From contig JAKMXF010000296.1 of NCBI GenBank assembly GCA_024704765.1, positions 284,465-348,464 of the forward strand: DNA of 64,000 nucleotides. Reading direction: 5' to 3'. The position numbers were made by a program, and so were the translations under genes. The notes beneath the pieces are model-generated. The model was not told the origin of the DNA. It ran no database searches and saw only the letters and a program-made list of their open reading frames with translations. This stretch comes from Oopsacas minuta. Lineage: Eukaryota; Animalia; Porifera. Positions within the stretch are counted from its first letter, which is position 1; each line of letters starts with the position of its first letter. Positions 7,501-49,999 of the stretch are shown in pieces.

Positions 7501-7728
7501 TCAGCAGATTACTGAAATACCTTCAGTCATTTATATAATCGATGTATAAACATAGAAACAGCAATGAAGTTCTACATTTGATTGACCACAAAAATAGAAA
7601 TACTTAACTATTTCATGTGATACTTTACATATTCCTCGTTGAATATATCTAGAATCTAATTCATAATTCAAAAAGGCATAAATAGAAGGTAAGAATTTAG
7701 GCCTAATGCATCCTAGTAGCCCACTATG
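4568..7728 (-). mobile_element. RAG1-like (Transib/RAGL) DNA transposon, 3161 bp
   Basis: Termini CACAGTGGGCTA (4568) and TAGCCCACTATG (ends 7728, reverse complement CATAGTGGGCTA); flanked by CGGACG/CGGGCG; removing the element and one copy restores the mariner reading frame. Confidence 0.85.
4930..7038 (-). pseudogene. RAG1-core-like transposase, multiply frameshifted
   Basis: Colinear motifs: KIKHGLDGSGSH (D at 6182-6184), NSCFSNQPVALICQKE, SIIDGKTLATMTGKRGAPCIAC (D at 5884-5886), PLHSYL, YPWVSL..AH, SEEGLEQGH (E at 5133-5135), C-terminal CSTCGQVGHQKNC. Confidence 0.9.
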
Positions 7729-12365: not shown

Positions 12366-15205
12366 AATGTGCTTATTTTCAGAATTGCTCGGATTATGTT
12401 AAGATCTAAATTGTACATATAACTATATTACTAGGGTATGTCTGTCTTATAACACTGTTTTACGGCAATTTGGCTTCCTGAATAACGGATATTGTTTCTA
12501 TGCGTATTTACCATCCTGATTCCAAAATTTCCACTATTTCTCTTCATTCGTTCTTGTTTTGGAGAAATTCTCATTGTATTTTTTGCAAATTTTATCTATT
12601 ATTTTTGAAATTTCTTGTATGGCTCTTTAAATTCGATATTTATAAATATATTCAATGTTACTTCTTTCGACAAGTATTTCTCTTGTAGCTAAGTGATTGG
12701 ACTAATGCTCAACAATTGCTTTGTAGCTAAGTGATTGGACTAATGGTATTCAAGCTATTCGAATTTTCAAGCTGTCAGCCAGGTGACTACCCACACACAC
12801 ACACACACAATAGGGCTACGCTAGCATGAACCTACCCATGTTTCACACCTGCGATTTATCTCTTTAAAGAGTTTCTAATTGTTGGCGATTATATCTCTTA
12901 TTGATCGCTAATTGATTAGTTGAGTGTTTTCTGATATCATACGCTATCACGGGCACGTCATCCCAACATTACTTCACTAAAACTACAATAGTCTTATTTT
13001 AGCAGGCGATATTTGGGTATTTGTTTTGGGAGCTTCGAATTTTCAGGATGCTTGCAAGACAGATCTATAGAGCACCTTATATGGCTAACATATTGATTTA
13101 ACCTATACTATACAAATCGTAATTAGAGTTTAATCCAAATGTATGAGGTCATTAAATTTTGGCATAATTTACTGTATATGTAGAATATTCCATTTTGTTT
13201 AAGTTAAATCAAAGGCTTTTTGGTTTCAAAATGGCTAGATATTTGTCTTGTCAGTATCCTGAAATTTTGCAGCTACATAACACTTATATCCACAGAATGC
13301 TATGGAAGATACGAATATTGTCATTTCAGTGACGTAAGGTTCATATAACGTACCATTATATCGCTATATCTCAAAAGAAAACACGATCAATCTTTTAGCT
13401 CTCTTCAAACATATATTTTTCAGGAAGAAAAAATGTGTCTAACATTTGTATACCAGTGTCATTTTTCAGCACCGATGTATTTTGCCAGGCTCAAATTCAT
13501 ATACGTAGTATACTTACGGTGTGAAGTTAGCAGGATATTGAACCAGAGTCAGTTCAATAAACAAATTGTCCTACTTATACTCTTCAGATTTACCCAAAAT
13601 TGTTATCAATCGTAGAGGAGTGTTGGACATTGTATGAAGTAGATTTTTCTTTAAGAATTTTAGCTTTTAACAACCTTTTCGTCATGACAAGTAGGGTCGC
13701 TTCTCTATTAATAAGACGCCCTAAATGTGAGAATTCGAATCCGAATATTAAGTTTATAATTGTGACCCATTGATGTTTATGTAATTTACTTTCTTCCAAA
13801 AATTGCAAAAACTCGAGGAGATACAAGTATTCAAAGTTGATGTTGGAGTTAAAGTGGAGAGATGAGTATCATTTTACAAAAAGTGGGGTCGGTTCAAACT
13901 CATTTCTTATCCTAAATCTAACTGAACCCTAATTATTTTGATACAAATCGATAGTAGAGATCTAAACATGTCAAACAATATCTATATTACCAGAAATACT
14001 GAAAATTATCACCCGCATCGACCTTCTAAAAATTGATAAATTTTCTTTTTTTTTTTGTCATTTACGTATAGGTATAGGAAGTCAAATGATCATACTTATT
14101 ATAGTTCCAACTCTAACTTTCTTTCAACACTTCCAAAATTTAGCGCTTTGTCTTGTTGGAAATATATATTTTTATTTAATTTATTAAATTATATATACTA
14201 AATATATTTTGAACCAGTTACATAAAATATAGGTTTCAGATGTAATTACTTAAGAAAGTTGTGATATCTAGCAATGAAAGAAGCAGAGTCACGCCACTTG
14301 GTGGTCCAACTAAAAGTTTTTCAAATATTTCCTTCTTAAATACAACCCATCAACTAATATGTATAATTGTATAGTGTTAACTAAATATAGTATCCATTAT
14401 CAGTATCGTTGTATTTAATATCTGTAGAAACATATTTCAGCTTCTAGATCTAGAATCCAAATCTCCATTTTCATTTTTGTAAATGATAAAAACCATATTC
14501 CATTCTCCATATCATTTGAAACTGAACATTACGTAGGTACAATACTGTATACATACATAAAATTATGACAACATTTCTACAGGTACTATCCGATATACAT
14601 TTATACAGATAATATTCAGTCAAACTTGCCCACAGAAAGAGTTGATAAAAAGTACACAAGTGATAACAGCATCAATTTACAGTGATAGTTAGAAATTATA
14701 GTATTATATATCACTCTCATATTATAAAATTTCTTCCTTAAGATGGTTAGAATTGATAAATTGTGATATACATAATATCCAGAGCTATTATGAGCCCTAA
14801 GATCAAACAACCATAAAATTCCAACCATTTTTTTCTTATATACAAATATATCAGTTTTATCTCGTTAATTCTGCAACGAATAATTCTTATTTATGCTGCT
14901 GCACGAAATCTTCCTCTTCGGATCTGATTATATTACACAATCGGAAATATATAATTATTGCCAGGTATGCTTTCTTTTACTGTTCTCTATTTGTATAAAC
15001 AACTGAATATACATATATTACAGGGGCATTCAATAAATACTAATCATACCATCTAAAACTATAGATACTTGTGTAAAGTTGGTAATTTTTGCTATGAATG
15101 TTCAAAGTAGTCTCCTTTATACGCTACAACTGAATTTAGCCTTTTAACCCAACTAAGACTATGTGAAAAAAGACCACGTAAATGGACTAGGTGGAGTAAA
15201 AAATC

Positions 15206-15749
15206 TTGGGGTACGAACATATCCCGCTCAGTATATATTCGCACTTTGTATTTGGGGTACGAACATACCCCACTCAGTATATATTCGCACTTTGTATTTG
15301 GGGTACGAATATACCCCACTCAGTATGTATTCGCACTTTGTATTTGGGGTTTGAATATACACCACTCAGTATATATTCGCTCTTTGTTTTTGGGGTACGA
15401 ATATACCCCACTCAGTATATATTCGCACTTTGTATTTGGGTACGAATATACCCCACTCAGTATATATTCGCACTTTATATTTGGGTACGAATATGCCCCA
15501 CTCAGTATATATCCGCACTTTGTATTTGGGTACGAATATACCCACTCAGTATATATTCGCACTTTGTATTTGGGGTACAAATGTACCCCACTCAGTATAT
15601 ATTCGCACTTTGTAATTGGGGTACAAATATACCCCACTCAGTATATATTCGCACTTTGTATTTGGGGTACAAATATACCCCACTCAGTATATATTTGCTC
15701 TTTGCGGGGACAAATATAGTCCACTCAGTATATATTCGCACTTTGTATT
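15206..15749. repeat. Tandem array, 46-bp unit, about 12 copies
   Basis: Unit GGGGTACGAATATACCCCACTCAGTATATATTCGCACTTTGTATTT; each unit contains a GGGGTA..TACCCC inverted repeat; no unique spacers. Confidence 0.95.
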
Positions 15750-15759
15750 AAGCTTTAGT

Positions 15760-19303: not shown

Positions 19304-20584
19304 GAATAATAGAGTGATAATAATCTACTGAAATTATTTGGTAAAATTTTATTGGCAAAGAGGGTGAATTGATGCTTTGATATTTAGGTCTTAATAAATT
19401 TGTTAATCTTTCAAATATTGTCATTTGACTACTTAAACATCGGTAGATTCTCCGCTGAGTCCAAATATCAAGAATTTCGATTTGTATAAAATAGGTATTG
19501 TATGATTTCAAATTGTATCACAGAAGGACACATTAAAATGACAGCCACCGTCAGATGTCATATTAGTTATGGTCTTACATCTAAAAATCCTTAGATAACA
19601 CCATCCATCTAGTTGTATGGCAAGTTACATGCATTCATGAAATATGGTACAATTCGATAATTGTTTACAAAATATCGCCTATATTGTTGGATGGGAAGTT
19701 GATATTGGATGAGCTAGGCAATGTATTGGTCTAAACTGTGACTGTCAACTTCGTTTTCTCGTAAATTTGCTTAAATGGATAATAGCATACGCAATAAAAT
19801 GCTCTCCAATTACGATTTTTGACGAAAATCAAGATCAAGCGAAAGATGATCATGTTTAGGTTAGTAAATTTATTTATCATAATAATTTCCCCCTAAAAAC
19901 ATTCGAATTTTTCTGCTTCCCATCATAAATTTTTTTGTTAAAAATAATTCTACATTTTATTCAGTAGTATGTATTAGACAGGTACTAGAGGAATCAAAGT
20001 AAACCAAACAATCTAAATTACCAAAATGTATAATTCAATAAACAATCCTCAAACTAAACAAACTGCTCCAAACAAATCAATCAAATATCCAAGGAAGACT
20101 GGCACCCTCATCCATTCCAACTCCGCTCATCCATTTACCCTGGATCCTCTTAGACATATGTTGGTTGCCCGTATTATTGCAAAAGATAACCCAGTACTTA
20201 CCAAACAGTGACTTCACTATTCCTCTTGTTCCATCTATAGTATAATTTTCGGCCATCTTTTAGTAAATGATTGAGCCTAGCGCCCCATTAGGCCATCAAC
20301 TTAAATTACATAAGGTGTGAAGAAAACACGTGTCAATTCCGCAGCCTATGTATATTTCGTATTTTTGGCCTGCTCAGCTGAGAAGAGTACAGTTTTTACA
20401 ATACGACCAGTCTAAGACTGAGCATTAGTGGCAACGACACGGATATCAAACAACCCCTTAGTTTGTGGGGCGCCATACTCCCCTAACTCCCAAACCTGGA
20501 ATTAGCGCTGCCACTCCTAAAAAGTCATCTACTTCACTTACTATCGGTTCTCGAACTATGTCTTTATAAGCCATTGAAGCAATA

Positions 20585-22540
20585 CAGTGAAACCCCGCGT
20601 ATCGGGGCACCTTTTGCCAAGCAAAAAGTGCCCCGATAAGCGGGGTTCTAGGAAAATAGTTGTACACCCTTGTAAATATTACCGATTTAGAACACAAACA
20701 TCATCATGACACACTCTGAAATATGACTGATAATTACGCAGAATACTACACATTCTAAGTTCACTAGGAGACTGTTATGCTATCTAAAGACTAGTTTTCT
20801 TGAAGAAATCTTCAATGGTGGTTTGCGTCGCCTCCATGTAGGCCCTTTCCTCGATAATTTGCCTATACCATGCCAGGTTGAAGCCACCTCCCAGCACTTC
20901 ATCATCTCCACGTCCAGCAGCGTACAGCTCGATTGTCTCAAGTGCTTGCAGCACCTGTTTGTTGTTAGGAATTTCTGCCACATCATCCTCTGTAGTAATA
21001 ATCTCGGTAGGTGCAATAGCCTGAATTGAAACTTCTTCCAGCTGGTCTTTCAATTCAGTCACCACCTTGTCAAACAATTCATCTGGCTCCACGACGGGGG
21101 GGAATATCTCCATCTGTTCCTCCTCATCAGAGAGCAGAGTCTCTGCCTCCGTTTCCAGTAGGGGTGTCTGTTGTGGCTCTACTATATCCCCTGCTTTAGA
21201 GAAGCCACAGTGGGAGAAGCACTTCACGATAGTTGCCGGTTTGAGGTCGCGCCAAGTTCTAAAAAGCCACACAATCACTCTTGCTAGATTGATTTCCTTG
21301 TACGGGTCTACTTCCCCACATTCATGAGTGAGAGCACTGAGAATAAAATTGTGCAGCTGCTTCCGATAGAGAAGCTTTACAGTCTGGATGATACCAGCGT
21401 CACACGGCTGGGTGCTGCAAGTAGTGTTCTTGGGGAAGAACACAACCTTCACAGCCCTGAATTCCATTTGTTCTACAATGTTGTGAACAGTTGCGTTGTC
21501 CATAAATAGCAGAACCTTGCGGCCAGCTTGATACATTAGGCTTTCAAATTCATTAATCCACCAGGAAAAGATGTCTCCGTTCATCCACGAACTTTTTTGT
21601 GATTTGTAGGAAATTGACATGTTCTCAAGATCGACACTACGAAGGCACCTTGGCCTGGTAGATTTACCGATGATGAGTGGTTTCACTTTTTCACCCATCC
21701 AAGAGCAGCATATTAGTAAAGTTAACCGCTCCTTCTGAGCCTTACCGCCATGACAGGCATCACCGGGCATTACAAGAGAAAGTGATGTAGTCTGTTTGTA
21801 GTAAAGCCCCGTTTCATCGCAATTAAAGATGTTTTTCGGGTCGTATCCTTCTATCAGCTCTGGGATCTGCTCCATCCAGTTCATCACCACTACTTTGTTG
21901 GCCGATGCCGCCTCGCCACTAAGGTGCCTTCCATGAATCCCATGACGTCTCTTTACTCGATCAAGCCAACCTTCAGAAGCAGAGAACCCTTGGATGTTGC
22001 AGTTCTCAGCCTTACGGGGGCAAGAGTGCGCAGCATTGGACCTTTTACCGGTATTCCATGCTCTTTGGCTCTCTCAAGAAAAAGGACGCATGCATTCTCG
22101 ATTTCGCAGTACTTTGGCGCTATGTCCACAAGCTTTCTCCTTTTGAGGTTGTTTGGAATGTTTCCCTGAACATCCTTGAGATTCTCGATCTTGTCACGCT
22201 GATCTCTAAGGATTCTCCCGACCTGACCTTTGCTACTTCCAACCTGCAAGGCGATTTGCCTCTCGGATTTGCCTGCCTTGCTGAGTTCAATTACTTCAGC
22301 ACGAGTCTCTATTGGGAGTGGATGACGCTTAGCCGCCATTGTACGTATATAAATACTAAGTTTTCAGGCACAAATATATGTTCAATAAGGAAACAAACTC
22401 TATTCGAGGTGCCCCGATACGCGAATGCCGCCCCGATACGCGGGGTTGATTTTAATTGAAGAATAACAAATTTCCATCCTACTGCCCCGATAAGAGGGGT
22501 GCCCCGATACGCGCCTGCCCCGATATGCGGGGTTCCACTG
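20585..22540 (-). mobile_element. Tigger/pogo-family DNA transposon, full length (1956 bp)
   Basis: TA|CAGTGAAACCCCGCGTATCGGGGCA ... TGCCCCGATATGCGGGGTTCCACTG|TA; subterminal GCCCCGATA repeats. Confidence 0.95.
20784..22339 (-). pseudogene. Tigger-type DD32D transposase (HTH-psq + CENP-B HTH + DDE_1) with one frameshift
   Basis: MAAKRHPLPIETRAEVI..., ..ASEGWLDRVKRRHGI.., NCDETG, FMDNATVH, QPCDAGII (32 residues between the last two D); frames join at the G5 run 22016-22020. Confidence 0.92.
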
Positions 22541-25530: not shown

Positions 25531-26915
25531 CAGTCTGTCAACTTGAAATTGGGAAAATCTTTTTCGATGTTAGAATGTTCCTAATTGCTTTTTCAAATTG
25601 GAGATCGTAATAATATTGATACTTTGTGTTTTTCAACTATTTCTAGTCATTTCTTAACCAACTGAACTTCTCTAGCTGACTGCGGTAACAAAATATTTCA
25701 ATTTATACTTAGTTGCTAATCAAATAATCTATATAAATATTTATCACTTGAATTTCTCGCAGCACTTCTATTTCTTCGCTAATAATTCTTTACTTCCATC
25801 AATTCAAAACCTTAAAATGAACGAGCAAGAACAGCGTAACAATATCAAGATACTTTTCGACACAGGAATCACGAATTGTATGGAATTATCTCGAAGAACT
25901 GGAGTTCCAAAAAGTACAGTTTATCGCACTGTTTACAAATTGAGGAATGCTGAATCCGTTGATAGAAAGATTGGTTCCGGGAAACAGCGTCAGACCAAAG
26001 CAAATAACGCTAGATTACTTGTTAGTTTGGCAATCAACAATCCTAGGTTATCTGTGAGGAAGTTGACTTGCAAATTTAACAAAAGGCGGGGTCTATCGTT
26101 CTCACACGAGGCTGTAAGGATTGAGATGAAGCGGCGTGGCTACACCCGCAAGGTTGCTAGAAAGATTCCGATGCTTACACAAACCCATAAGGCTTATCGT
26201 GTCGATTGGGCTAAGTCTAACAGATGTAGAGATTGGGAGAAAGTGATATTTAGCGATGAGATGTCCATTTGGCTAGCTGGTGGCAGAGTATGTGTCTGGT
26301 GTAAAGGTGATTCGAAACCTGTAAAACCCAGTACGAAACACTCTCCTAAATTGCATGTTTGGGGAGCGTTTTCAGCACGTGGAACGTTTCCTATCAAGGT
26401 TTTCAGAGAAAATCTCACCGGGCGACTTTACTGCGACATTCTGCACGAATGTTTAGTAGAACAAGCAAGTGTCTTGTACCCTGATGGATGGGTTTTCCAG
26501 GAAGACAACGATCCCAAACACACGTGCAACCTTGCTAAAGGATACATGGAGGAGAAAGGGATACATAGGATGGATTGGCCTGCTTGTAGTCCGGATTTGA
26601 ATCCGATCGAGAACCTCTGGTCGTGGATCAAGAGACAAATCGATTTGAAGTCACCACGAAATTTAAATGAGCTGGAAAGGGAGCTAAATAAAGGATGGAA
26701 TTCTTTAGAACATGAATTTTTACGTCCATTTTTGGTGATCGATGCCCAAAAGAGTCAAATTAGTACGAAAAGTAACGGAAATAAGATAAATTATTAGACC
26801 TACTATATTATTGATTGTTTAAGGATTCTAATAGTATATTTAGAATAGAAATACACTAAATGTACTTGTAGCTAGGGAAAAACAAAGATCTTCCCAATTT
26901 CATGTTGACAGACTG
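25531..26915 (+). mobile_element. Tc1-family (DD34E) transposon inserted in the mariner
   Basis: ~32-bp TIRs CAGTCTGTCAACTTGAAATTGGGAA / TTCCCAATTTCATGTTGACAGACTG; flanks TG (likely mutated TA) and TA. Confidence 0.93.
25817..26797 (+). CDS. Tc1 DD34E transposase, 326 aa, open reading frame
   Basis: Paired-like HTH, GSGKQRQT, VIFSDE, KLHVWGAFS, FQEDNDPKH, SPDLNPIENLW (34 residues between D and E); last ~20 aa appear locally out of frame. Confidence 0.9.
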   Translation: MNEQEQRNNIKILFDTGITNCMELSRRTGVPKSTVYRTVYKLRNAESVDRKIGSGKQRQTKANNARLLVSLAINNPRLSVRKLTCKFNKRRGLSFSHEAVRIEMKRRGYTRKVARKIPMLTQTHKAYRVDWAKSNRCRDWEKVIFSDEMSIWLAGGRVCVWCKGDSKPVKPSTKHSPKLHVWGAFSARGTFPIKVFRENLTGRLYCDILHECLVEQASVLYPDGWVFQEDNDPKHTCNLAKGYMEEKGIHRMDWPACSPDLNPIENLWSWIKRQIDLKSPRNLNELERELNKGWNSLEHEFLRPFLVIDAQKSQISTKSNGNKINY

Positions 26916-38986: not shown

Positions 38987-40416
38987 TATTCTCTAAACTG
39001 ACTGACAAAGTTTGTATAATCGAAGATCAAGAAAATTTTAGCCACATTTTTATTCATAAACGAACTGGCACACACATATTTGATATGTGCCAGTTCTGCC
39101 ATATGTGACCCAAATATGAAAATAATAATATGTAAACAAGATTTGCTCTAAAGAATGAGAAAGTGTAATACAGGGGTAATACACACATTATTCTATCCTA
39201 TTTGAATTCACTGTAATTTAGATCTGATGATTTTATTAGCTCATTATCTATTTAATGAACAAAGTGTGACTAGAAATATCTAATAGAAAAAATGTTTATC
39301 GATTTAGTTAGGACCATGTTGACTAACATAGTCAAATAGCTATTTCAGGTACATTATCCTATGCATAATCAAATATTCGCCGTGTTTCATTGATTTACAA
39401 TTGTATATTTACTAGTGTGCGAATACATCAGTTCGGTAGCGTAGCATAAATAATATAAATTATCTAACCCTAACATATCTTTATAACTTATAATATTTTC
39501 TTCTTGTTGGGGAATAACCTTGTTCTTATTTGCTTGAGGGTGTTTCCCCAGACAAAACTTAATCTAAGTGGTAGTAAGGATGAACATGATATTCTGTGCC
39601 AATATCACTTTCATCGAGAATATCAGGTTCAATGTCTTTATCTAAACTGGACGTACTCTCTGCATCAGTAGTCATACCATCTCAAAGTGCCTTTCCAAAT
39701 TTAGCTAATTTTCTCACCTTACGATGGCAGCTTTCCATCCCTTGCTCAATTGTCCAGGATATCCTAAGATTGCTAATCGAGACTTCAAAATTATTTGTTA
39801 GTTTACATTTTTCCTTATCCTTATTAGGAATTTCGAATTAGTTTAGATTCCCCAGAAATTGTTTGAACAAAACATGGACCTCATAAGCACCTACCATTCC
39901 ATTTTCGAGCCAATTTTGAAAATATTAGGCAGAGGTCTGATTTTCCTACTTTTCCAAAGTATGAGTCAATTACTTCAGAATAGGGATATTAGGGTTTAAA
40001 ACGATCAATTTATTCAGGCTCCTGGATTAAGTATACATTTTTAGATTGTCTCTGATCACTATCATAATTGTCAACTAAATACTAGTGGATCATTTTGTTC
40101 TCAGTGTTGCCCAACGGAAATAGAGAAGTGAGTTGTTCTCTCCTTGTGTCAATATAAGATTACCCAATCAATTGCAAGCGTATTCCCCATTCATTGCTAC
40201 TGCATGACTAGTATTCAAAGTTTTCACTCTCCTATAAATTGAAGTTAACGAGTAGTTCCTTGATCTTTAAGATTGTCCTTTATAGAAGGCTATTTAAGGC
40301 CGAACTCTATAGTTTTGTAATTTTCTCCCTTAATGTGCATGTCAATGACTCATGTATTGAGGACTGTTGCGTAGGATTTTGACCCGCAATACAAAATCCT
40401 AATAGCATATCCATGG

Positions 40417-40900
40417 TGCGGGTCAAAATCCTACGATGTAATATATGCGTAGGATTTTGACCCGCATCAAAATGTATTACACTAATTACAGCCGTAGGAT
40501 TTTGACCCGCATATAATATATTATTGTCGTAGGATTTTGACCCGCATATAATGTATTATTGTCGTAGGATTCTGACCCGCATATAATGTATTATTGTCGT
40601 AGGATTCTGACCCGCATATAATGTATTACACTAATTACAGCCGTAGAATTTTGACCCGCATATTATATATTATTGTCGTAAGATTTTGACCCGCATATAA
40701 TATATTATTGTCGTAGGATTTTGACCCGCATATAATATATTATTGTCGTAGGATTTTGACCCGCATATAATATATTATTGTCGTAAGATTTTGACCCGCA
40801 TATAATATATTATTGTCGTAGGATTTTGACCCGCATATAATGTATTATTGTCGTAGGATTTTGACCCGCATATAATGTATTATTGTCGTACGATTTTGAC
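40417..40900. repeat. Subterminal array of the Ginger TIR core (35-bp unit, some 44-45 bp): 13 direct copies plus 1 inverted
   Basis: GTCGTAGGATTTTGACCCGCATATAATATATTATT repeats with cores at 40449 through 40888; inverted TGCGGGTCAAAATCCTACG at ~40417. Confidence 0.95.
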
Positions 40901-42087
40901 TCTAAAGTAATCTTACTTCTCTTTCATTTGACTTTTTCGAATTCCATACACTTTCATTACGTAATTACCACTAAATGTACGTAATTTAATTCAACTTTAG
41001 ACTAGCTATACTTGTACGTAGCTGAATAAATAAGTCAATTTAGAGTTGGATTCTAGAAAGTAGTGAATTTGTTTGATAACATGTAAACTATGTTCCCACT
41101 ACATATTACAAATTTACAATATGTATAATTATCCAAAATGCCAAAAATGGACAGTTACGTATATAAATATTTTATATTAATATTACTTGGACAGGAGGTG
41201 GTAGGTATTTGATAATTGTGTTTAGTAACTCATAATAAATAATATAATTTAACATGTCAACCTATATATTGCAATACACTCTATCAAATAACAAAAATTT
41301 TACAAGCATTAGCATGATAATGAATATTCGGAATATCTTTAGTAGGAATTGTAGGCGATTTCATCTTTGCCCATTTCTCTATACTTCCTAACAAGCTTTA
41401 AGGAATATACCACTGAAATATGTTCATCTATTGGACAAGCATAGACTATGCATTTGTTACGGGAGTCTTGGTATAATGTTGATACACATATAGAGTTGAG
41501 GTGAAAACCGCGAGCCTCTGGCACGCTGCATACTCCTGGAAAACACTAGATTTCTATAAACAAAACAAGTCAGCTGCGGTGGCCTCCTCCTTCCCCTTAC
41601 AGCCACCCCCTAACGTTAAACGTTTAACGTTAACCTCACCTTGTTTATGTGTGCAGTGTTGGAGCGAGTTTGATGTGATTACGATCACACCAAATTCGAT
41701 TCTAAGCTGCAACATAAACGAATACGTACAATAAATCGTAATTTAACAGACACGCGAGGAGCTAACGGACCCCGAAGGGCCACAGACAAGGAAACATTAA
41801 AAAATAAAAAATAGATAAGAAACTCGCTTGTATTTGATTCTATGCTGTATTTCGTCTCGGCGTAGACTCGTCAGTTGCGCTGCCTTTCTCGCAATATACT
41901 TAGATGGTAGAGTGATGATATTTGCCACTGGGGATGTGCTGTTGCAGGTCGCGTTTCCATTATCTGGGCTCACCATGATAGGGATTGCGTTGCCTGAATA
42001 ACCTCGGGCAGAGCACCCCACAAGGTTCGATGTACCTTGCCTTTGAGCGCTTTTGAATGATGGAAAAGAGTCGTGAATCGCTAAAAA

Positions 42088-45000
42088 TTAGTCAGAAGAG
42101 TGCAAGAGGTAGAATACAGTATTGAGTGATCCGATGAAAGTGTCACAGTCCCAAAGTTGGATAATTGGTTCTCTCATTCCGTCATATTTATAGAATTGCT
42201 CGTTTTGGTAAAGGATTGAATCGAAGTGTCCATTATTCAATATGCTAAAGCCAGCAAGTTGGTAGTGAAGTGTCCGTTGGTTGTGACTGATGGTAAAGTG
42301 TTTGTCAATATCACTTGCAAAAATGTCTGGCAATTCGGGTAGATGTCCGATTTCAATTGTTAGCATGACAGGTATTGACTTGAATTGACCAGATATCCTC
42401 TCTAAGACAGCAGTAGTTGATCCACAAGACTTGCATTTAATAGGAACGAGACTTCGATTAACAGATGATTCCAGGTTTGTAATAACGCCTCCTATATTAC
42501 TAATCATGGATTGTGTCTCAAAGATATTGGTGCATTGGTGGCATTGGAAGATAGTGAAATATTTGTCGTTACACAAATCTTCTGTTCGTAAATATTTGAT
42601 GATGTTACCCTCTGATCCAAAGAAATCATAAGACCGTATCAATCCTGAGGAATCATAAATAACTTCAAGCCCAATTTTAGTAGCAACATATTCTCGAAGT
42701 TTCTCAAATTCACAATTAGCAGCCAATTGGAATATGTAGTGGAATTCAGCTTCAATATGTGTACTTCCGATTAACTTCAGTGAGTCTATGATGGTTGCTT
42801 TATTCGAACTAAGAATAGCCAATATATTGTCGGTAGAACAGGTGTTAGATTGCACGATGTTGTTATACTCTCCTCCCCATTTAGGATATGGGATAAGATC
42901 TGATGCATTTTGTATAGATTGTTCTGGTATTTCAATGATCTCATGAACTTGCTCAGTTGGGAATATTAACTCAATTATTACTGGTAATAGAACAGCAATT
43001 GGATAGTCAAGATCTCTTCGTGTCTCTTCAGGTATTTCAGTAGGATAGGAGGAACGATATTCTGCGTACCAATTACCGGCTGATACAGCAAGTTTCTCCT
43101 TAATCTCAAAATTTAGTTCGTTGGGTGGATGGTTAGAATATAGTAAATTCAATGAAGTTAGAGATGCAGCTTTTGTAGCGAGTTTCTCATGTAGTTGGGT
43201 TAAGTATGTGTTATTGACAAGAGCTGATAGTATTCGAGGTTTCAATTGAAGTAGCTCAGAATCGATATTTTCATAGATTGAGTGTTGTTGCGGTGTTTCA
43301 AATGTTTCTTCCATGGTATCCAGGTTCAATATATCATCCAAAGAATCTAAATACAAATAAATATGTGAAATGTAGGATTGCTATTACGTATTAATCGAAT
43401 CAATGCAGAACAAACTAGTTTATATGTACTTAATCATGGGCTGAGTCAATTAGTTATAGTCAGTACAATATTGTCTCGCTAATGTATTTACCGCTAGAAG
43501 GGAATTTGCAAGATCTTTTGGGCTTCTTTGATTTGCCTGTCTTCGTTCGAACCTGACGTTTTTCGTTCATGCGAGAATGATATTTTCTTGATAGATGGAT
43601 AGGTAATTTTGTTGTTTTGCTATCTGGGTCTTTGCGAGCAACTAGGTGGCTTGGTTTAACTTCCTCTATCGTATATGGCCCCAAATATTTCTTTGCATCT
43701 TTTGTTCCTGGGAGTCGCTTGGCTTTCTTTATATTATGTACAAGTACCTCATCTCCTTCCACAAATTCTGATCTAAAGTTTACACAATGATTATACAAAG
43801 AAAATAATGTGCCAATTACGTACAGTTTGTAATGATGCTAATTATATAACTAAAAGTAAGTGTTTTGGAATTTAAGAATTCATATAATTGAGGAAACAAT
43901 AAATTAGTTCTGATTCAAGATTATTTCATATTTATCTGAATATACAACAGTCAGTGGATTTAATTTAATTTTAGTAAGAGATGATGTATGAAATTCCAAC
44001 ATGTTACATCACAACAAGAATGTGTTTCGTTATTGCTTACCTGTTGTGTTTAACTTTGCTGTCATGTTTTCTTTTGAACTTTCTGACCAGCCTTGATGTT
44101 TTCAATAGCAGTCATCCTGTCAGCTTTACGTGTGGAAGAAAGATTTTCTATCCATTCGTTATCAATTATAGGAAAGTCAAATGGGCGTGTTTCGTTTGCA
44201 TCCATTTGAATATTCTCATCTTCTGGTACTTCTGCCTCTGAGATATCAGCTTCGGTTAGTAATCCGGGGTTAGTTGGAGAAGTGATAAGATTGAGAAGGT
44301 TAGATGAATCAAAGTCTCTCCCAAACATGAGATGGAAGGGTGTGTAGCTTGTAGAGATTTTGGTTTGAGTATTTGCTGCTAGTACTGCTGTCTGTAATTT
44401 CTCTGTCCATTCAGTGTCCCCATCAGATTGCATCTTGTTGATTTTTCTATTTGTAAAAAGTGTTAAATTGATTCAAAGCTATCTGATTATAAACGACGTG
44501 TATTAAACGTATGTAAGGCTTAGAATAGATATATATTTATAATTAGCATCAATACTCACGTTTTCAATATTTTGTTGTGTGACTCAACAAGTCCGTTACT
44601 TTGTGGGTGGTATGCTGTAGTTCTTCTGGTGTTGATATTTATCTTCTTGTGAAATTCCTGAAATTCCTATTTTGAAAGTAAATAAGAGAATGATAACAAT
44701 CTACTACGCGCATGTATTTAGTCTTGTACAACAATAGTAAGAAAGATAAAACGATTAATAAGGTAAATTTTCCATCCGAAGTTAGTAGCATTAATTCGTA
44801 AATTCTTATTTATTAGTATTTAACATAAATTAAAATCCAATTTTCCACACGGTTTCTTAAATATGGTCATCAGGACGCATAATTTCCTACCAGGGTATAT
44901 ATTGAAGCAATGCGTTGACAATTGACAATGCAACTTGTACGTACGTATATCCAATATAGTAAGTTGCATTGTATATCGGGAATAATTTACTTGGTGTATT

Positions 45001-46392
45001 TACAATTACTAATCTTGAGTATGTAAAAATATGAGTTACCTTGCTTGAGAATTCTGTTCCCTGATCATGTTGGAGGATGTTAGGCACACCGAATGAGAGA
45101 TAAATTTCCTGTAAACAATCCAATATTTCTTTAGATGTTTTAGTCTTGAGTGGTCGGGCAATTACAAATTTACTCAGGTAGCACACGATGACAAGAATGT
45201 GCTGAAATCCAAGTACAGTGCGAGACATATTACATATGAGATCAATTCCACAATGACACCATGGTTCTTCAGGAGGAGGAATAGGTTGAAGCTCTCGTTG
45301 TGGCTGAGGAGGTAGAGCAGCAGAGGTTTGACAGTCATGGCAAGTTCGGATCTAGAACGGGAAATGATTTAATTGTCAGTTGCAGTCCAGTCTAATGTAA
45401 TTTGCCACGTCCCAGATGTCCCACTAAATTAGCATTCCGTCTCGCTTTTTCTTCACTCAGGGTGGCAAATATGTTTATGTGAAATACTCCCACTACCTAT
45501 CCCAATTACTAACTACCGCAAGGATCATTAGTTGTTAGATACATGATTGGTTGGTTGTACCGCACAAATAGATTTCCATATGATAAAATTGTATACCGTA
45601 TACTAAATATCATCAGATCGCACAAATAAAGGTGTATACAGTAGAATAATTACAAGGTGAATAACCTCAAACTATAAAATACATCCTGTTCTCAGACTTA
45701 CCAACCCCTTTTGCAAATTTCCCTGGATTATCGTTGCTAAATCCCTGGATTTCAAAATTTGTAATCCAGGTAACCCTGGAGGGTTGGTAAGTCTGTGTTC
45801 TCAGCCACATTTTCTTGGAAAATCATATATGAAAGAAATAAGTAATTTAGTAACTCACGTAGGATCCAACATCATTGTATATACCATTCCAATCATATTT
45901 GTTTTGGATGCCATCAATGGTAGTGTTGATTCCAGGATGAGTGACATTGTGATAGAATCCGATAATGTTGTCAATTTCTGAGACTAGTGGAATCTCCAAG
46001 TATTTCACACAGCCATTCTTCTTTCTGAAAATCTGCAAGAAAATTATTCTAGTTAAACGCAGAGGTTATAGGTAGCATTGAGGGGGCAGAGGAGCCCCCT
46101 AGCGTTTTCGCCCTTCTCATCTCCCTATTGTACGCAAATTTAATGAGGGAACTACATATCTGCCTCCTCGCAGATATGTAGTTACCTCAAGATTTCTAAT
46201 TATGTCTCGGAAATATGTATAAATCAAAAATATCATTGAGGAATATACCTTCATTAGCTTATTCTCTTGAAAGTAAATCCCCTTGCACTTTCTGACAAAA
46301 TTCTTCTTTCTGTGGCGATCACTCTTGATTTCTGGTGGGATAATATTCGTCTGGAGGTATCCACGAATTGCTTCATGCTCTGTCGCATCCAT
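42088..46392 (-). CDS. Ginger integrase-USP-like fusion, 7 exons (46392-46249, 46032-45859, 45351-45040, 44666-44560, 44446-44041, 43772-43492, 43346-42088), ~893 aa, one +1 frameshift near 44067-44070
   Basis: All six introns are GT..AG with consistent phases (0,0,0,2,2,1) after removing one A; H2C2 finger (YHNVTHPG..TCHDC), GIDL / HDQGTEF / GLVESHN = DD35E, GPY motif (KYLGPYTI), then NTC / CxxC..CxxC / GHF / YDG. Confidence 0.88.
45693..45795. mobile_element. MITE within Ginger intron 2
   Basis: Perfect TIRs CAGACTTACCAACCC / GGGTTGGTAAGTCTG; flanks TGTTCT / TGTTCT. Confidence 0.85.
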
Positions 46393-47602
46393 AATGAAAA
46401 ATGCCAAAAGTAAATATAAGTGTTTGATGTTGAAATCTAGAAACAAAGTAAAATGTTAGTGTGTGCATTTAGGAAGTCACACATGTATAAATACGAATAC
46501 TATGTGACTAGGGATGAAATGTTGATATTACTTGATTTGGAATTGCTACTTGCGGGTCAAAATCCTACGCAACAGGACTTAAATGGTGCAGATTTCGAAG
46601 GACTATCTACTGCTAGGGCTTTCTTAACCAAACATTGTCTATAATTGATGCAAAATTTTATTCGTTCCAATCTGATCTCTTTCTGATTAAAATTAACAGG
46701 ACATACATCGGATTGACATAAGCCTGAATATTAGAGCAATTTCAAAGATCCATGGGTTCACCTACTTTCTATTTACATTACAAACATATTATTATTAACA
46801 TTTCAGATAACAATGACGTTCATAAATATTTAGTGTAGGATATTTCCTCTGAAGTTACTTATTCTATCTAAATTCAACCACCAAAATGTGTGTATTTTCT
46901 AATATATGAATGTATACCAAAAATGTATTTATAATGAATAATGATTCTCTAAAATTTCATTTATTAGTAAATACCCTTACAAACGGATAATCGTATTGTT
47001 TTTGGTGAATTCGCATCTTAATTGGGAGTATTTAGAAATCAGATTCAGAATTTTGAGAATTAGAAAGGTTTGTGTGGAAGCTGTCAATTCGTTTTCGATT
47101 TAAGTCTTCGACCACTTATCACCCAAAAAATGGCCAGCTATGGGATCAAAATGAGCCCATCTTGGATTCTTCCTAGATATATGTCTTGAATTCTACTATA
47201 AGTTGATTAGAATAACATAGCAGCGCGAACCCGCAGTCACACGATGGGGTTATGACTATTTGGAGAATAGAATGTTGCCACATCACTGGCAATTTCAACG
47301 TTGTTGGGGAAACAATTTGCCCCTACAAATACTACTGACCACTCGAACTATGCGAAATCCATCGCTAATTGCGAATATTGGCATAATATTCGTTTTCTGA
47401 TTAAACTGGATGAAATATGTCCATTTTAATATCTTCAAAATGTGTGCGAAAATGTCACTTTCCAGTGGCTAAATATTGAATGGCAAATAATTGCACCCGA
47501 CCCTATCTTAAACAATATCTTATCGTCAACTAAAAATTGCAGAGAATTGATTGTTACCAGACATTGCAATGATGACGTTACGATTGAATAACATTGTTCA
47601 TT

Positions 47603-48663: not shown

Positions 48664-49999
48664 CAGGGTGAACAAAAGTATTGTCGTCATTTTAATATAC
48701 ATAAATTCAAATTCCACATTCGTATGCAACCCTCGCTATTGATTTCTCTCAGTAAATATGTTTTTATACTACTTAGTTAAACTCGAGTGAAGTCAAATCT
48801 TAAATAAATATATTTTGGAATTATTTTCGTCATTTTGGAAATTTCTACCTAATTTTTGTGATATGAATGTCCAGGATTACGGATGATCTTAAAGATCTCA
48901 GGCATTGGGGATGCTTAAAGCAGGAGAAACGCCTAAAAAGGTTGCTCAAGTGTTGAATGTCAATATTCGATCAGTTCAGAGATGGGGGCGTAGCGATAGA
49001 TTGGGATTTTCAATGAAATCAAAGCCTAGGTCTGGACGTCCGCCGAAAATTGATAGAGTTGCGAAAATTGTCATAGCAAAGTCTTGGGGAGAGAAGGCAA
49101 TCTACACGAAAGCTAGCTCTGAGATTAATGAGAAGGGTTGTGATGTCCTCACACCTCTGTACATCGATATTTGAGAAAGTCTCTAGGTACTACGCCATTT
49201 AAAGGCCGAAAAGGCCTCGATTGACCTTGAAAATGGAGAAAAGCCGGATCGAATTTGCGCAGAAACACAAGGGTTGGATTGTAGAAGATTGGAATAGAGT
49301 TCTGTGGTCGGATGAATCTCCATTCGAGTTGTTTCCAACCCCAAACAGACAGAATGACCGAGTTTGGAGCAAGGATTCTGGTTCAATCGAACCCTGCAGA
49401 AAGATGAAATTTCCGGCGAAAGTTCACGTTTGGGGCATGATGTCTCACCAAGCCCTATCTGAGCTGCATGTTATACCTCAGGGGCAAACTATTAATGGAG
49501 AGTACTATCGTACGAAGATTTTGGCTGGATCTTGCAAAGATGCGATCAATAGAAGAGCAAAAATGGATCGGTTTTACCGCGGGCCATGACTTCAAAGATG
49601 TCCGAGATAATTTTTATGCAAGACGGGGCTTCCGCTCATACGGCCAAACTAACGCAAGAATGGTGCAAACAGAATCTTCCAGCGTTTTGGCAGAAAGCGG
49701 AGTGGCCTGGGAACTCACTTGACCTCAATCCCATTGAAACTTATGGTCAATACTGAAAGACAAAGTGGAAGAGTTTGAGCAAGCAAGCACCATGAGTAAC
49801 CTCGTAAAAAATTTGGAAAAGGCATGGAGTGGTATTTCAGGAGATGATTTGCAACATATGGTCTCCAGTATGCTCAGGCGGGTAGCACTCGTATTAGAAA
49901 GACAAGGAGACTATATTGGGAAATAATAATGTATTAATTGTTGTATTTTGCCTACGTTTGATTCATGATATAAAACGACAATACTTTTGTTACACCCTG
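48664..49999 (+). mobile_element. Tc1-related DD37E (TRT-like) transposon, full length, frameshifted
   Basis: TA|CAGGGTG(T)AACAAAAGTATTGTCGT TIRs; GRPPK, VLWSDESPF, KVHVWG, MQDGASAH...DLNPIE with 37 residues between D and E. Confidence 0.9.

What the first reader, a model, noticed from the sequence alone, without database searches (positions are those of the whole stretch)
42088..43346. Ginger transposase carries a C-terminal USP (peptidase C19-like) deubiquitinase domain with an intact catalytic triad
Seen: the last exon encodes PKWGG..QSNTCSTDNILAIL (Cys at 42838-42840), two CxxC pairs (CHQC, CKSC), FKSIPVMLTIEI, YQLAGFSILNNGHFDSILYQNEQFYKYDGM (His at 42226-42228, Asp near 42183) and terminal NTVFYL. 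It is spliced in frame (phase 1) to the integrase exons. Established: this motif order matches the USP Cys-box (GNTC), finger zinc ribbon, LP.xL box, His-box (GHY..W..xDD) and terminal LFY. As I recall, the accessory domains described for Ginger1 are OTU, Ulp1/SUMO protease and PHD, not USP. Inference: a mobile integrase-deubiquitinase fusion that may protect the transpososome from degradation or counter ubiquitin-based chromatin silencing at integration sites. This is the best candidate for an undescribed system here.
Basis: partly seen in the sequence, partly recalled or inferred. Interest (0 to 1): 0.92.

Follow-up and report, generated by a model that had tools for sequence, protein, structure and literature searches.

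The report
Sponge Ginger transposase with USP-fold protease
A young cut-and-paste transposon of the glass sponge Oopsacas minuta makes a spliced transposase whose tail is a very divergent ubiquitin-specific-protease (USP) fold domain, a third kind of deubiquitinase-type module for Ginger elements, where only OTU and Ulp1 were described.

Summary
The window (Oopsacas minuta, GCA_024704765.1) holds a complete 6,210-bp Ginger1-type DNA transposon at 40365-46574, on the minus strand. It has TGTTG...CAACA termini, 25-nt inverted ends and a 4-bp duplication, GGAC.

Its 7-exon gene joins a Gypsy-type integrase (H2C2, DDE, GPY/F) in phase 1 to a 1,259-nt last exon at 43346-42088. Transcript-like contigs of a public run carry this exon 6/7 junction and three others.

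Sequence profiles (Pfam, PDB sequences) do not recognise the last exon. A confident AlphaFold model (pLDDT 88.8) does match solved USP structures:
- The first 50 Foldseek hits are all USP-fold proteins (one is the inactive PAN2), and 381 hits have E <= 0.001.

The NTC cysteine, the four zinc-ribbon cysteines, the HF histidine and the YD aspartate are conserved across the family (141 clusters). dN/dS between subfamilies is 0.24-0.36.

A second lineage encodes integrase and domain in one 749-aa ORF. The nearest integrase relative carries a different tail (weakly OTU-like), so the modules were exchanged.

This window copy is broken by a 2-bp deletion in exon 5. Catalysis and substrate are inferred, not shown.

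I found no paper describing a USP-bearing Ginger, but deubiquitinase modules on transposons are a known theme, so this is a new variant of a known kind. First readers of this scan noted the same fusion at least 8 times elsewhere in this genome; those notes are unchecked.

The parts
40365..46574 (-). Complete Ginger1-type DNA transposon, 6,210 bp
   Evidence: 25-nt terminal inverted repeats beginning TGTTG and flanked by identical 4-bp GGAC. A second copy, L003:3805-9736, is 95% identical end to end and has its own TSD, GGCC.
40361..40364 (.). Target-site duplication GGAC (left)
46575..46578 (.). Target-site duplication GGAC (right)
40365..40389 (+). Terminal inverted repeat at the 3' end of the gene (TGTTGCGTAGGATTTTGACCCGCAA)
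46550..46574 (-). Terminal inverted repeat at the 5' end of the gene
40493..40900 (.). Subterminal array: 11.4 copies of a 35-bp unit that contains the TIR core CGTAGGATTTTGACCCGCA. Likely transposase-binding sites (inferred).
46249..46392 (-). Exon 1 (start codon; N-terminal Y..P..F..Y region)
   Evidence: tblastn with P0145; intron 1 at 46033-46248 from GT..AG ends and loose ends of X2 contigs
45859..46032 (-). Exon 2 (integrase H2C2 zinc domain, the His pair)
   Evidence: Pfam PF17921, E 6e-7; joint 45351|45859 in X2
45040..45351 (-). Exon 3 (CxxC of H2C2 at 45331-45342; the two Asp of the DDE core)
   Evidence: Pfam rve, E 5e-7
44560..44666 (-). Exon 4 (the Glu of the DDE core, HPQSNGLVES)
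   Evidence: joint 44446|44560 in X2
44041..44446 (-). Exon 5. It is broken here by a 2-bp deletion near 44063-44066.
   Evidence: The frame changes after QKVQKKT. In run X2, 'AT' is put in behind 44063 in 7622 of 8148 depth, and in part of the depth of the DNA-like runs.
43492..43772 (-). Exon 6 (GPY/F motif; GPY at 43673-43681)
   Evidence: joints 43772|44041 (4 contigs) and 43346|43492 in X2
42088..43346 (-). Exon 7 (the finding): linker, helical region and USP-fold domain, then the stop codon
42964..43296 (-). Conserved helical region (exon-7 residues 17-127) of unknown affinity
   Evidence: Six helices in the AF2 model, block pLDDT about 78-98. It is conserved in the family. No atlas match (0.48) and no hhalign match.
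42091..42897 (-). USP-fold core (exon-7 residues 150-418)
42838..42840 (-). Candidate catalytic Cys169 (NTC motif), at the N-terminus of helix 169-180
   Evidence: 63 of 67 family representatives have Cys here; invariant in the 18 near-complete sequences
42424..42543 (-). Fingers zinc ribbon: Cys268, Cys271, Cys304, Cys307
42226..42228 (-). Candidate catalytic His373 (HF motif), at the start of strand 373-380
   Evidence: 35 of 43 representatives; invariant in alignment A4
42181..42183 (-). Candidate third triad residue Asp388 (YD motif), 15 residues after the His
   Evidence: 29 of 37 representatives have D, the others mostly E or N

Best explanation
The locus is one copy of a recently active, multi-copy Ginger1-type cut-and-paste transposon of the glass sponge Oopsacas minuta.

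Its single gene is spliced from 7 exons into a transposase of about 894 aa. The N-terminal 475 aa are a Gypsy-type integrase (H2C2 zinc domain, DDE core, GPY/F). The last exon adds a helical region and a 270-aa papain-like cysteine peptidase of the USP fold: a thumb with the Cys at a helix N-terminus, fingers with a Cys4 zinc ribbon, and a palm with His and Asp.

The most likely working model is as follows. The integrase part binds the TGTTG... ends and the subterminal repeats and carries out excision and integration with a 4-bp staggered cut. The tethered USP-like module removes ubiquitin, or a ubiquitin-like modifier, from the transposase itself or from chromatin and repair proteins at the transposition site. 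This is the role already proposed for the OTU and Ulp1 modules of other Ginger1 elements.

Shown here: the element's structure, the splicing, the fold, residue conservation, purifying selection, the conserved linkage to integrase, and recent mobility of relatives. Inferred: catalytic activity, the substrate (Ub, SUMO or other Ubl), and the benefit to transposition.

The window copy is disabled by a 2-bp deletion in exon 5, so it could move only if transposase came from another copy.
For: Element anatomy: TIRs, TGTTG termini and a GGAC TSD. Sister copies have their own 4-bp TSDs: GGCC, GACC, GAGC, CCCT.

Integrase domains: Pfam PF17921 and PF00665; the GPY motif is read directly.

Splicing: GT..AG joints occur only in run X2, whose depth is high in exons and low in introns. 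They include 43346|43492. The annotated model P0145 uses the same junction.

Fusion in a single ORF in a divergent lineage: P0276 is 749 aa, inside an element with 149-nt TIRs. In L004 and L005 the integrase lies directly upstream of the domain.

Conservation: N, T, C, D, two of the zinc Cys, E, G, H and F are invariant in 18 near-complete members. Across all representatives, Cys is kept in 63/67, His in 35/43 and Asp in 29/37.

Selection: dN/dS is 0.24 (dS 0.50) and 0.36 (dS 0.23) between subfamilies, and 0.43 between two O. minuta copies.

Recent mobility: two 99.6%-identical copies lie at different loci in one assembly. At least 12 annotated O. minuta proteins belong to the family.
Against: No sequence profile recognises the domain. 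Pfam UCH and UCH_1 are absent for the window protein. Among 142 members only 3 give sub-threshold UCH hits (best E 0.042). Family profiles find no USP among PDB sequences.

Foldseek TM-scores are modest (0.29-0.53) and identity to solved USPs is 9-16%.

The spatial arrangement of Cys, His and Asp in the model could not be inspected. No activity data exist. USP-fold pseudoenzymes such as PAN2 are among the hits.

The exon 6/7 joint rests on one contig (depth 298) of one run whose library type is not on record. Reads come from the whole family (>=93% identity), not provably from this copy.

This copy is frameshifted.
Confidence: 0.75

Rival explanations
1. The USP-fold domain is a non-catalytic ubiquitin- or Ubl-binding module (a pseudo-DUB). 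It would tether the transposase to ubiquitinated chromatin or repair factors rather than cleave anything.
For: USP-fold pseudoenzymes exist and appear among the hits (PAN2; 'inactive ubiquitin carboxyl-terminal hydrolase' clusters). The domain is too divergent for Pfam UCH.
Against: The NTC Cys and the HF His are invariant in near-complete members, and the YD Asp is largely kept. Pseudo-USPs typically lose at least one of these residues (established knowledge, not tested here).
Confidence: 0.1
2. The domain is a cis-acting processing protease. It would cut the transposase polyprotein, for example releasing the integrase from its tail, as papain-like viral proteases do. Deubiquitination would be secondary or absent.
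For: The fold is papain-like with a conserved triad. A long, poorly conserved linker lies between the GPY/F motif and the domain. Viral papain-like proteases combine both activities (established knowledge).
Against: No conserved Gly-Gly-like cleavage motif was looked for or seen in the linker. All closest structures are isopeptidases for Ub, SUMO, ISG15 or Fubi. The OTU and Ulp1 modules that occupy the same position in other Ginger1 elements point to Ub/Ubl chemistry.
Confidence: 0.08
3. The last exon is a captured host gene fragment carried as a passenger, with no role in transposition.
For: Transposons do capture host sequences. Extra domains of Helitron-like elements are discussed as captures.
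Against: The linkage to the integrase persists across lineages whose domains are only 25-35% identical (L004, L005, L009). The splice is in frame and transcribed. dN/dS is 0.24-0.36. Exhaustive search found only this closed family and no host USP near it.
Confidence: 0.05

Closest known systems
Ginger1 DNA transposons with OTU or Ulp1 (+/- PHD) C-terminal protease domains (Bao, Kapitonov and Jurka 2010, PMC2836005)
   Same: Gypsy-type integrase transposase with H2C2, DDE and GPY/F. TGTNR termini. 4-bp GC-rich TSD. GT-AG introns. A cysteine isopeptidase-type domain at the C-terminus of the transposase.
   Different: The C-terminal module is USP-fold, not OTU or Ulp1. The TSDs are GGAC, GGCC, GACC and GAGC rather than CCGG/CCGT. 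The perfect terminal inverted repeat of this family is only 25 nt plus a one-sided subterminal array, against the 40-270 bp described (the L009 lineage has 149 nt). The host is a hexactinellid sponge, a phylum not in the 2010 list.
Ubiquitin-specific proteases (MEROPS C19, Pfam UCH PF00443); best structural matches are USP30, USP35, USP46/12, CYLD, USPL1, USP18 and USP1
   Different: Identity is 9-16%. There is no significant match to any Pfam USP-clan profile or to PDB USP sequences. The motifs are altered (NTC..DN for GNTCY.NS, HF for HY, YDG for DD). The domain is fused to a transposase and preceded by a family-specific helical region.
Other deubiquitinase modules on transposons: VTD and OTU in Helentrons (PMC9741609), Pfam UCH in HLE2 Helitron-like elements (PMC11417382), peptidase C19 fused to an IS5-like transposase_11 in Trichomonas vaginalis (cited in PMC2836005), Ulp1 in Mutator-like elements
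   Same: A thiol isopeptidase of the ubiquitin/Ubl system is carried by, and often fused to, the transposition protein. The proposed role is protection from degradation or modulation of DNA-damage signalling.
   Different: The transposase class differs (integrase-type DDE of Ginger1). The USP-like domain is not detectable with the Pfam model used in those surveys.

Membership tests
Ginger1 DNA transposons | Gypsy-like integrase with H2C2 zinc finger and DDE core | tested here: met
   PF17921 at E 6e-7 and PF00665 at E 5e-7 on window exons; 1e-11 and 3e-10 on the sister-copy protein P0145. The best non-family relatives are Gypsy integrases at about 30% identity.
Ginger1 DNA transposons | GPY/F motif after the DDE core (absent in Ginger2) | tested here: met
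   KYLGPYTIEEV in exon 6 (43673-43681 for GPY) and WIGPYPIKEV in P0276. Read directly; no profile was used.
Ginger1 DNA transposons | YPYY motif upstream of the zinc finger | tested here: inconclusive
   Exon 1 has Y..(6)..P..(12)..F..(7)..Y, and L004 has a similar pattern. The published alignment is a figure and was not available for a column-by-column comparison.
Ginger1 DNA transposons | Terminal inverted repeats, TGTNR termini | tested here: met
   TGTTG...CAACA with 25-nt perfect TIRs. This is shorter than the published 40-270 bp. The related L009 element has 149-nt TIRs starting TGTTT.
Ginger1 DNA transposons | 4-bp GC-rich target-site duplication (CCGG/CCGT in Hydra) | tested here: met
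   4-bp TSDs GGAC, GGCC, GACC, GAGC and CCCT in five copies; one copy is imperfect. The length and GC-richness fit; the sequences differ from CCGG/CCGT.
Ginger1 DNA transposons | No reverse transcriptase, RNase H or LTRs | tested here: met
   Between the TIRs there is only the 7-exon gene and non-coding repeats. The four sponge integrases form a clade (97/94) apart from RT-linked Gypsy integrases.
Ginger1 DNA transposons | C-terminal OTU or Ulp1 protease domain | tested here: not met
   The C-terminal domain is USP-fold. This is a described attribute of Ginger1 rather than a strict criterion: Ginger1-1_BF is listed with no such domain.
USP / peptidase C19 (Pfam UCH clan) | Significant match to a USP sequence profile (PF00443, PF13423, PF15499) | tested here: not met
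   No hit for the window protein. Among 142 members, 3 give UCH hits (best E 0.042) and 2 give Peptidase_C98 hits (best E 0.0024), all below gathering scores. Family profiles against PDB sequences find no USP.
USP / peptidase C19 (Pfam UCH clan) | USP fold (thumb, palm, fingers) | tested here: met
USP / peptidase C19 (Pfam UCH clan) | Catalytic Cys at a helix N-terminus, then His and Asp/Asn in the palm, in this order | tested here: met
   Cys169 starts helix 169-180, His373 starts strand 373-380, and Asp388 follows strand 383-387. They are conserved across the family. Residue-level equivalence to USP catalytic residues rests on motif order and the aligned ranges, not on a printed structural alignment.
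USP / peptidase C19 (Pfam UCH clan) | Triad residues within bonding distance in three dimensions | not testable with these tools
   The tools do not return the model's coordinates.
USP / peptidase C19 (Pfam UCH clan) | Cys4 zinc ribbon in the fingers (present in most USPs) | tested here: met
   CxxC at 268-271 and 304-307, conserved; weak zinc-ribbon Pfam hits.
USP / peptidase C19 (Pfam UCH clan) | Ubiquitin/Ubl isopeptidase activity | not testable with these tools
   Needs a biochemical assay.

The most novel reading that the evidence does not exclude
Glass-sponge Ginger1 transposons carry a previously unrecognised USP-fold isopeptidase family that current sequence profiles cannot detect. It has been exchanged with a different C-terminal module (weakly OTU-like) between closely related integrase lineages. 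If the USP-like domain is an active deubiquitinase or Ubl protease, Ginger1 would have recruited three unrelated isopeptidase classes (OTU, Ulp1, USP-like) to the same position. That would argue that removing ubiquitin or a Ubl is itself a selected step of integrase-type transposition. The best AlphaFold-DB matches (E 4e-13 to 1e-9, above canonical USPs) are C-terminal domains of uncharacterised multidomain proteins, one of them SWIM-type. This hints at a wider, unannotated clade of USP-like domains carried by transposons.
Probability: 0.45. Interest if true: 0.65.

Novelty: new variant of a known kind. Interest (0 to 1): 0.52.

Why it matters
Cysteine isopeptidases of the ubiquitin and SUMO systems keep turning up on eukaryotic transposons: OTU and Ulp1 on Ginger1, Ulp1 on Mutator-like elements, and OTU, VTD and UCH on Helitron-like elements. 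None of the papers read here ties such a domain experimentally to a step of transposition.

This family adds an independent case. It has three useful properties:
- The domain is spliced in frame to the transposase and is transcribed.
- It is under purifying selection.
- It has been swapped against another tail within one integrase clade.

That makes it a natural comparison set for asking whether deubiquitination is needed for integrase-type transposition. It also shows that Pfam-based surveys of transposon cargo miss divergent USP-fold domains, which structure prediction recovers. It extends Ginger1 to hexactinellid sponges.

Tried and rejected
Tests that found nothing:
- Pfam on the exon-7 protein gave only weak zinc-ribbon hits.
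- phmmer and two family profiles (A1, A4) against PDB sequences found no USP.
- A profile search of the 5.8-billion-protein set with alignment A3 returned only the closed family and no Pfam-annotated USP bridge.
- hhalign of the family profile against the linker and tail of the OTU-type relative P0212 gave probability 0.9%.
- The ESM Atlas search on the helical region scored 0.48, which is meaningless.
- phmmer of the P0212 tail against PDB found no OTU, so its OTU nature rests on a Pfam hit of E 0.074 and remains tentative.
- The TIR pattern in JGI metagenome contigs gave 0 matches.
- Rfam and tRNA scans of the window found nothing.
- Literature searches for Ginger1 with 'ubiquitin-specific' and for 'peptidase C19' with transposase turned up nothing beyond the 2010 paper.

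Readings rejected:
- Chance ORF: rejected by the 141 homologous clusters.
- Separate downstream gene: rejected by the spliced contig, the annotated model and the single-ORF relative.
- LTR retrotransposon integrase: rejected because the element has TIRs, a TSD and no RT.

The organisms behind the five ENA assemblies (ERZ25766962, ERZ25072730, ERZ25069837, ERZ25072740, ERZ25071281) could not be identified with these tools.
Full report
**Where we are.** The exact 408-aa product of the ORF, from its first ATG, is on record on contig JAKMXF010000296.1 of assembly GCA_024704765.1. A sponge-genome paper lists that assembly as Oopsacas minuta, a hexactinellid (glass) sponge. The window is AT-rich (about 34% GC) and full of transposons.

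**The observation.** The minus-strand ORF 42088-43356 is 422 aa and is the longest ORF in the window. I number the exon-7 protein from S=1 at 43344.
- Cys169 is at 42838-42840, His373 at 42226-42228 and Asp388 at 42181-42183.
- The two CxxC pairs are at residues 268-271 and 304-307.

The exon boundary at 43346 is a canonical acceptor (ttag|AT). The donor of the upstream exon is AGCG|gtaaat, which gives a phase-1 junction.

**The element.** The gene lies inside a 6,210-bp element, 40365-46574.
- Its ends are 25-nt inverted repeats starting TGTTG, flanked on both sides by GGAC.
- The end downstream of the gene carries 11.4 tandem copies of a 35-bp unit that repeats the TIR core.
- A second O. 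minuta copy (L003:3805-9736) is 95% identical from end to end and has its own duplication, GGCC.
- Related elements in other assemblies have GACC, GAGC and CCCT.
- Two copies that are 99.6% identical sit at different loci of one assembly.

So this is a mobile, recently active TIR element with a 4-bp GC-rich target duplication and TGTNR ends. These are the published hallmarks of Ginger1.

**The gene.** tblastn with the annotated protein of the sister copy (P0145, LOD99_1838, 726 aa) and the splice signals give seven exons:
- E1 46392-46249
- E2 46032-45859
- E3 45351-45040
- E4 44666-44560
- E5 44446-44041
- E6 43772-43492
- E7 43346-42088

Exons 1-6 encode a Gypsy-type integrase. Pfam finds the H2C2 zinc domain and the rve core, and the GPY/F motif is read as KYLGPYTIEEV. 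There is no reverse transcriptase.

An intact copy would give 894 aa. In this copy a 2-bp deletion in exon 5 shifts the frame after ...QKVQKKT. The sister copy L003 instead has one in-frame stop in the last exon. Both are therefore recently decayed copies of an active family.

**Transcripts.** Four public runs of one sample hold the sequence.
- Three of them cover it evenly and show no GT..AG joint.
- The fourth, X2, has high depth in exons and low depth in introns. For example, depth is 34,729 at 43470-43626 against 288 at 43784-43940.
- X2 carries joints with GT..AG ends on the minus strand at 43346|43492, 43772|44041 (4 contigs), 44446|44560 and 45351|45859. Loose ends in X2 fit intron 1.

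The exon 6/7 junction that creates the fusion is thus present in RNA-like contigs and absent from the DNA-like runs.

In X2, 7,622 of 8,148 depth carries the two bases that the window copy lacks in exon 5. The expressed copies are therefore mostly intact at that point.

Caveats: the run's library type is not on record, the 6/7 joint rests on one contig, and reads at 93% identity or more come from the family as a whole.

**What the last exon is.** Sequence methods fail.
- Pfam gives only weak zinc-ribbon hits.
- phmmer and two family profiles find no USP among PDB sequences.
- Of 142 family members, only 3 give sub-threshold UCH hits and 2 give Peptidase_C98 hits.
- One of those C98 hits is collinear with the C-terminal half of the USPL1 profile (P0050 residues 48-188 against profile positions 126-259, E 0.0024).

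Exhaustive phmmer over 1.84 billion representatives finds a closed family of 141 clusters, mostly fragments of decayed copies.

With these as the alignment, AlphaFold2 gives a confident model: pLDDT 88.8, pTM 0.73. The structural searches agree.
- Foldseek against the PDB returns 381 matches at E<=0.001. The first 50 are all USP-fold proteins: USP36, USP46, USP12, USP1, USP18, Ubp8, USP35, USP30, USPL1, USP4, USP15, USP9X, USP21, USP8, USP14 and the pseudo-USP PAN2. Their E-values run from 4e-8 to 8e-7, all with probability 1.00.
- AlphaFold DB clusters and the ESM Atlas shape search also return USP/UCH families.
- The language-model feature search puts UCH clusters first, at 0.95 with 185 shared features.

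In the model, Cys169 opens helix 169-180, His373 opens strand 373-380 and Asp388 follows strand 383-387. The two CxxC pairs lie in the beta-rich middle part. This is the USP arrangement of thumb, fingers with zinc ribbon, and palm, as I know it from the published HAUSP/USP7 description. I could not measure the triad distances because coordinates are not returned.

**Conservation and selection.**
- In 18 near-complete members from lineages only 25-66% identical to the window protein, the N, T and C of the Cys box, the following D, two of the four zinc cysteines, the E and G of the E.GH box, and the H and F of the His box are invariant.
- Over all representatives, decayed ones included, Cys is kept in 63/67, His in 35/43 and Asp in 29/37.
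- dN/dS is 0.24 (dS 0.50) between P0002 and P0149, and 0.36 (dS 0.23) between P0034 and the tail of P0276.
- It is 0.43 between the two O. minuta copies, from only 23 substitutions.

**Is the fusion a rule?** Yes.
- In a lineage whose domain is only 30% identical, one uninterrupted 749-aa ORF (P0276) runs from the DDE core through GPY/F into the domain. It sits inside a 3.2-kb element with 149-nt TIRs and a CCCT duplication.
- In O. minuta's own divergent lineage (L004), a 452-aa integrase ORF ends 90 bp before the domain ORF.
- L005 and L002 show the same order.

**Module exchange.** In a maximum-likelihood tree of integrase parts, the four sponge transposon integrases form a clade (97/94) apart from RT-linked Gypsy integrases. 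Within that clade, the window family pairs (100/100) with P0212. P0212 is an O. minuta integrase about 50% identical over the kept columns, and its tail is unrelated to the USP-like domain. That tail gives only a weak OTU hit at E 0.074, not confirmed against PDB.

Forcing the USP-like carriers into one clade costs 31.5 log-likelihood units, with p-AU 0.001. The caveat is that I named this group after seeing a first tree, and the sample is small. The C-terminal module has therefore been replaced at least once among close integrase relatives.

**Comparison with what is known.** The 2010 description of Ginger lists OTU, Ulp1 and PHD as Ginger1 tails, from Hydra, Aplysia, amphioxus and aphid. It already speculates that the ubiquitin pathway is involved in transposition, and it cites a transposase_11 plus peptidase C19 protein of Trichomonas. 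Later work found VTD and OTU deubiquitinases in Helentrons and showed VTD activity, and found Pfam UCH domains in HLE2 Helitron-like elements. I found no paper joining Ginger1 with a USP. Repbase and Dfam could not be checked.

The finding is therefore a new variant of a known kind. It is a third isopeptidase class at the Ginger1 tail, represented by a USP-fold family that sequence profiles do not see, in a new host phylum.

**Mechanism.** The integrase part presumably binds the conserved ends and performs cut-and-paste with a 4-bp stagger. The terminal 23 nt are nearly identical between families whose domains are only about 53% identical.

The tethered USP-like module most likely cleaves ubiquitin or a ubiquitin-like modifier, either from the transposase itself or from chromatin and repair factors at the site. 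The near-equal structural scores for USPs acting on Ub, SUMO (USPL1), ISG15 (USP18) and Fubi (USP36) leave the substrate open. These steps are inference. Rivals are a non-catalytic Ub/Ubl-binding module, a cis-processing protease, and a passenger capture. The conserved triad, the kinds of closest structures and the conserved, selected linkage speak against each in turn.

**Verdict.** First-stage readers of this scan noted the same fusion on at least eight other pieces of this genome. Those notes are unchecked and are not independent evidence, but they agree with the multi-copy nature shown here.

Noticed in passing
ESM Atlas shape search, row 2: The vertebrate cluster 'Chromosome 14 open reading frame 28' (331 aa, no common Pfam family) is the best match by its own TM-score among rows that cover the core: 0.64, 258 residues aligned, rmsd 3.7 A over model residues 148-418. 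It looks like an unannotated USP-fold protein. Whether it is related to transposon-borne USP-like domains is open.
   Followed up: no
AlphaFold DB cluster hits: The best AFDB matches (E 4e-13 to 1e-9, 16-19% identity, better than canonical USPs) are C-terminal domains of uncharacterised multidomain proteins: A0A814FZU2 'SWIM-type domain-containing' at [592-859] of 861 aa, A0A0H5R1N7 'GCM domain-containing', A0A6P8IPW8 at [871-1149] of 1150 aa, and X1XT72 and X1WZY9. SWIM fingers occur in Mutator-type transposases, so other transposase plus USP-like fusions may exist unannotated.
   Followed up: no
window 20787-21890 (-): A 368-aa ORF with a full DDE_1 domain (PF03184, E 1e-36), i.e. a pogo/Tigger-type transposase. 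It lies in the GC-richer stretch 20001-22000 (GC 0.44).
   Followed up: partly
window 25748-26794 (+): A 349-aa ORF with HTH_Tnp_Tc3_2 and DDE_3 domains: an apparently intact Tc1/mariner transposase.
   Followed up: partly
window 48905-49926 (+): A series of short ORFs in shifting frames that look like a decayed Tc1/mariner transposase. Only a weak HTH_23 hit was obtained.
   Followed up: partly
window 4568-7728: First-reader notes of this scan describe a RAG1-like transposon here. The 159-aa ORF 5443-5919 (-) inside it gave no Pfam hit.
   Followed up: no
window 15131-15750: A tandem array with a 46-bp period (9 overlapping 164-nt copies reported). Two long ORFs (181 and 157 aa, + strand) run through the repeat and are probably artefacts of it.
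   Followed up: no
P0213 (O. minuta, annotated 'PEP-CTERM domain protein'): This annotated protein joins NHL-repeat beta-propeller sequence to an integrase 89% identical to this family. It is probably a chimeric gene model across a Ginger insertion.
   Followed up: no
L002, L007, L008 against the window: The terminal 23 nt of the TIR differ by a single base between the O. minuta family and families in other assemblies, although their USP-like domains are only 52-53% identical. This suggests strong constraint on the transposase-binding end.
   Followed up: partly
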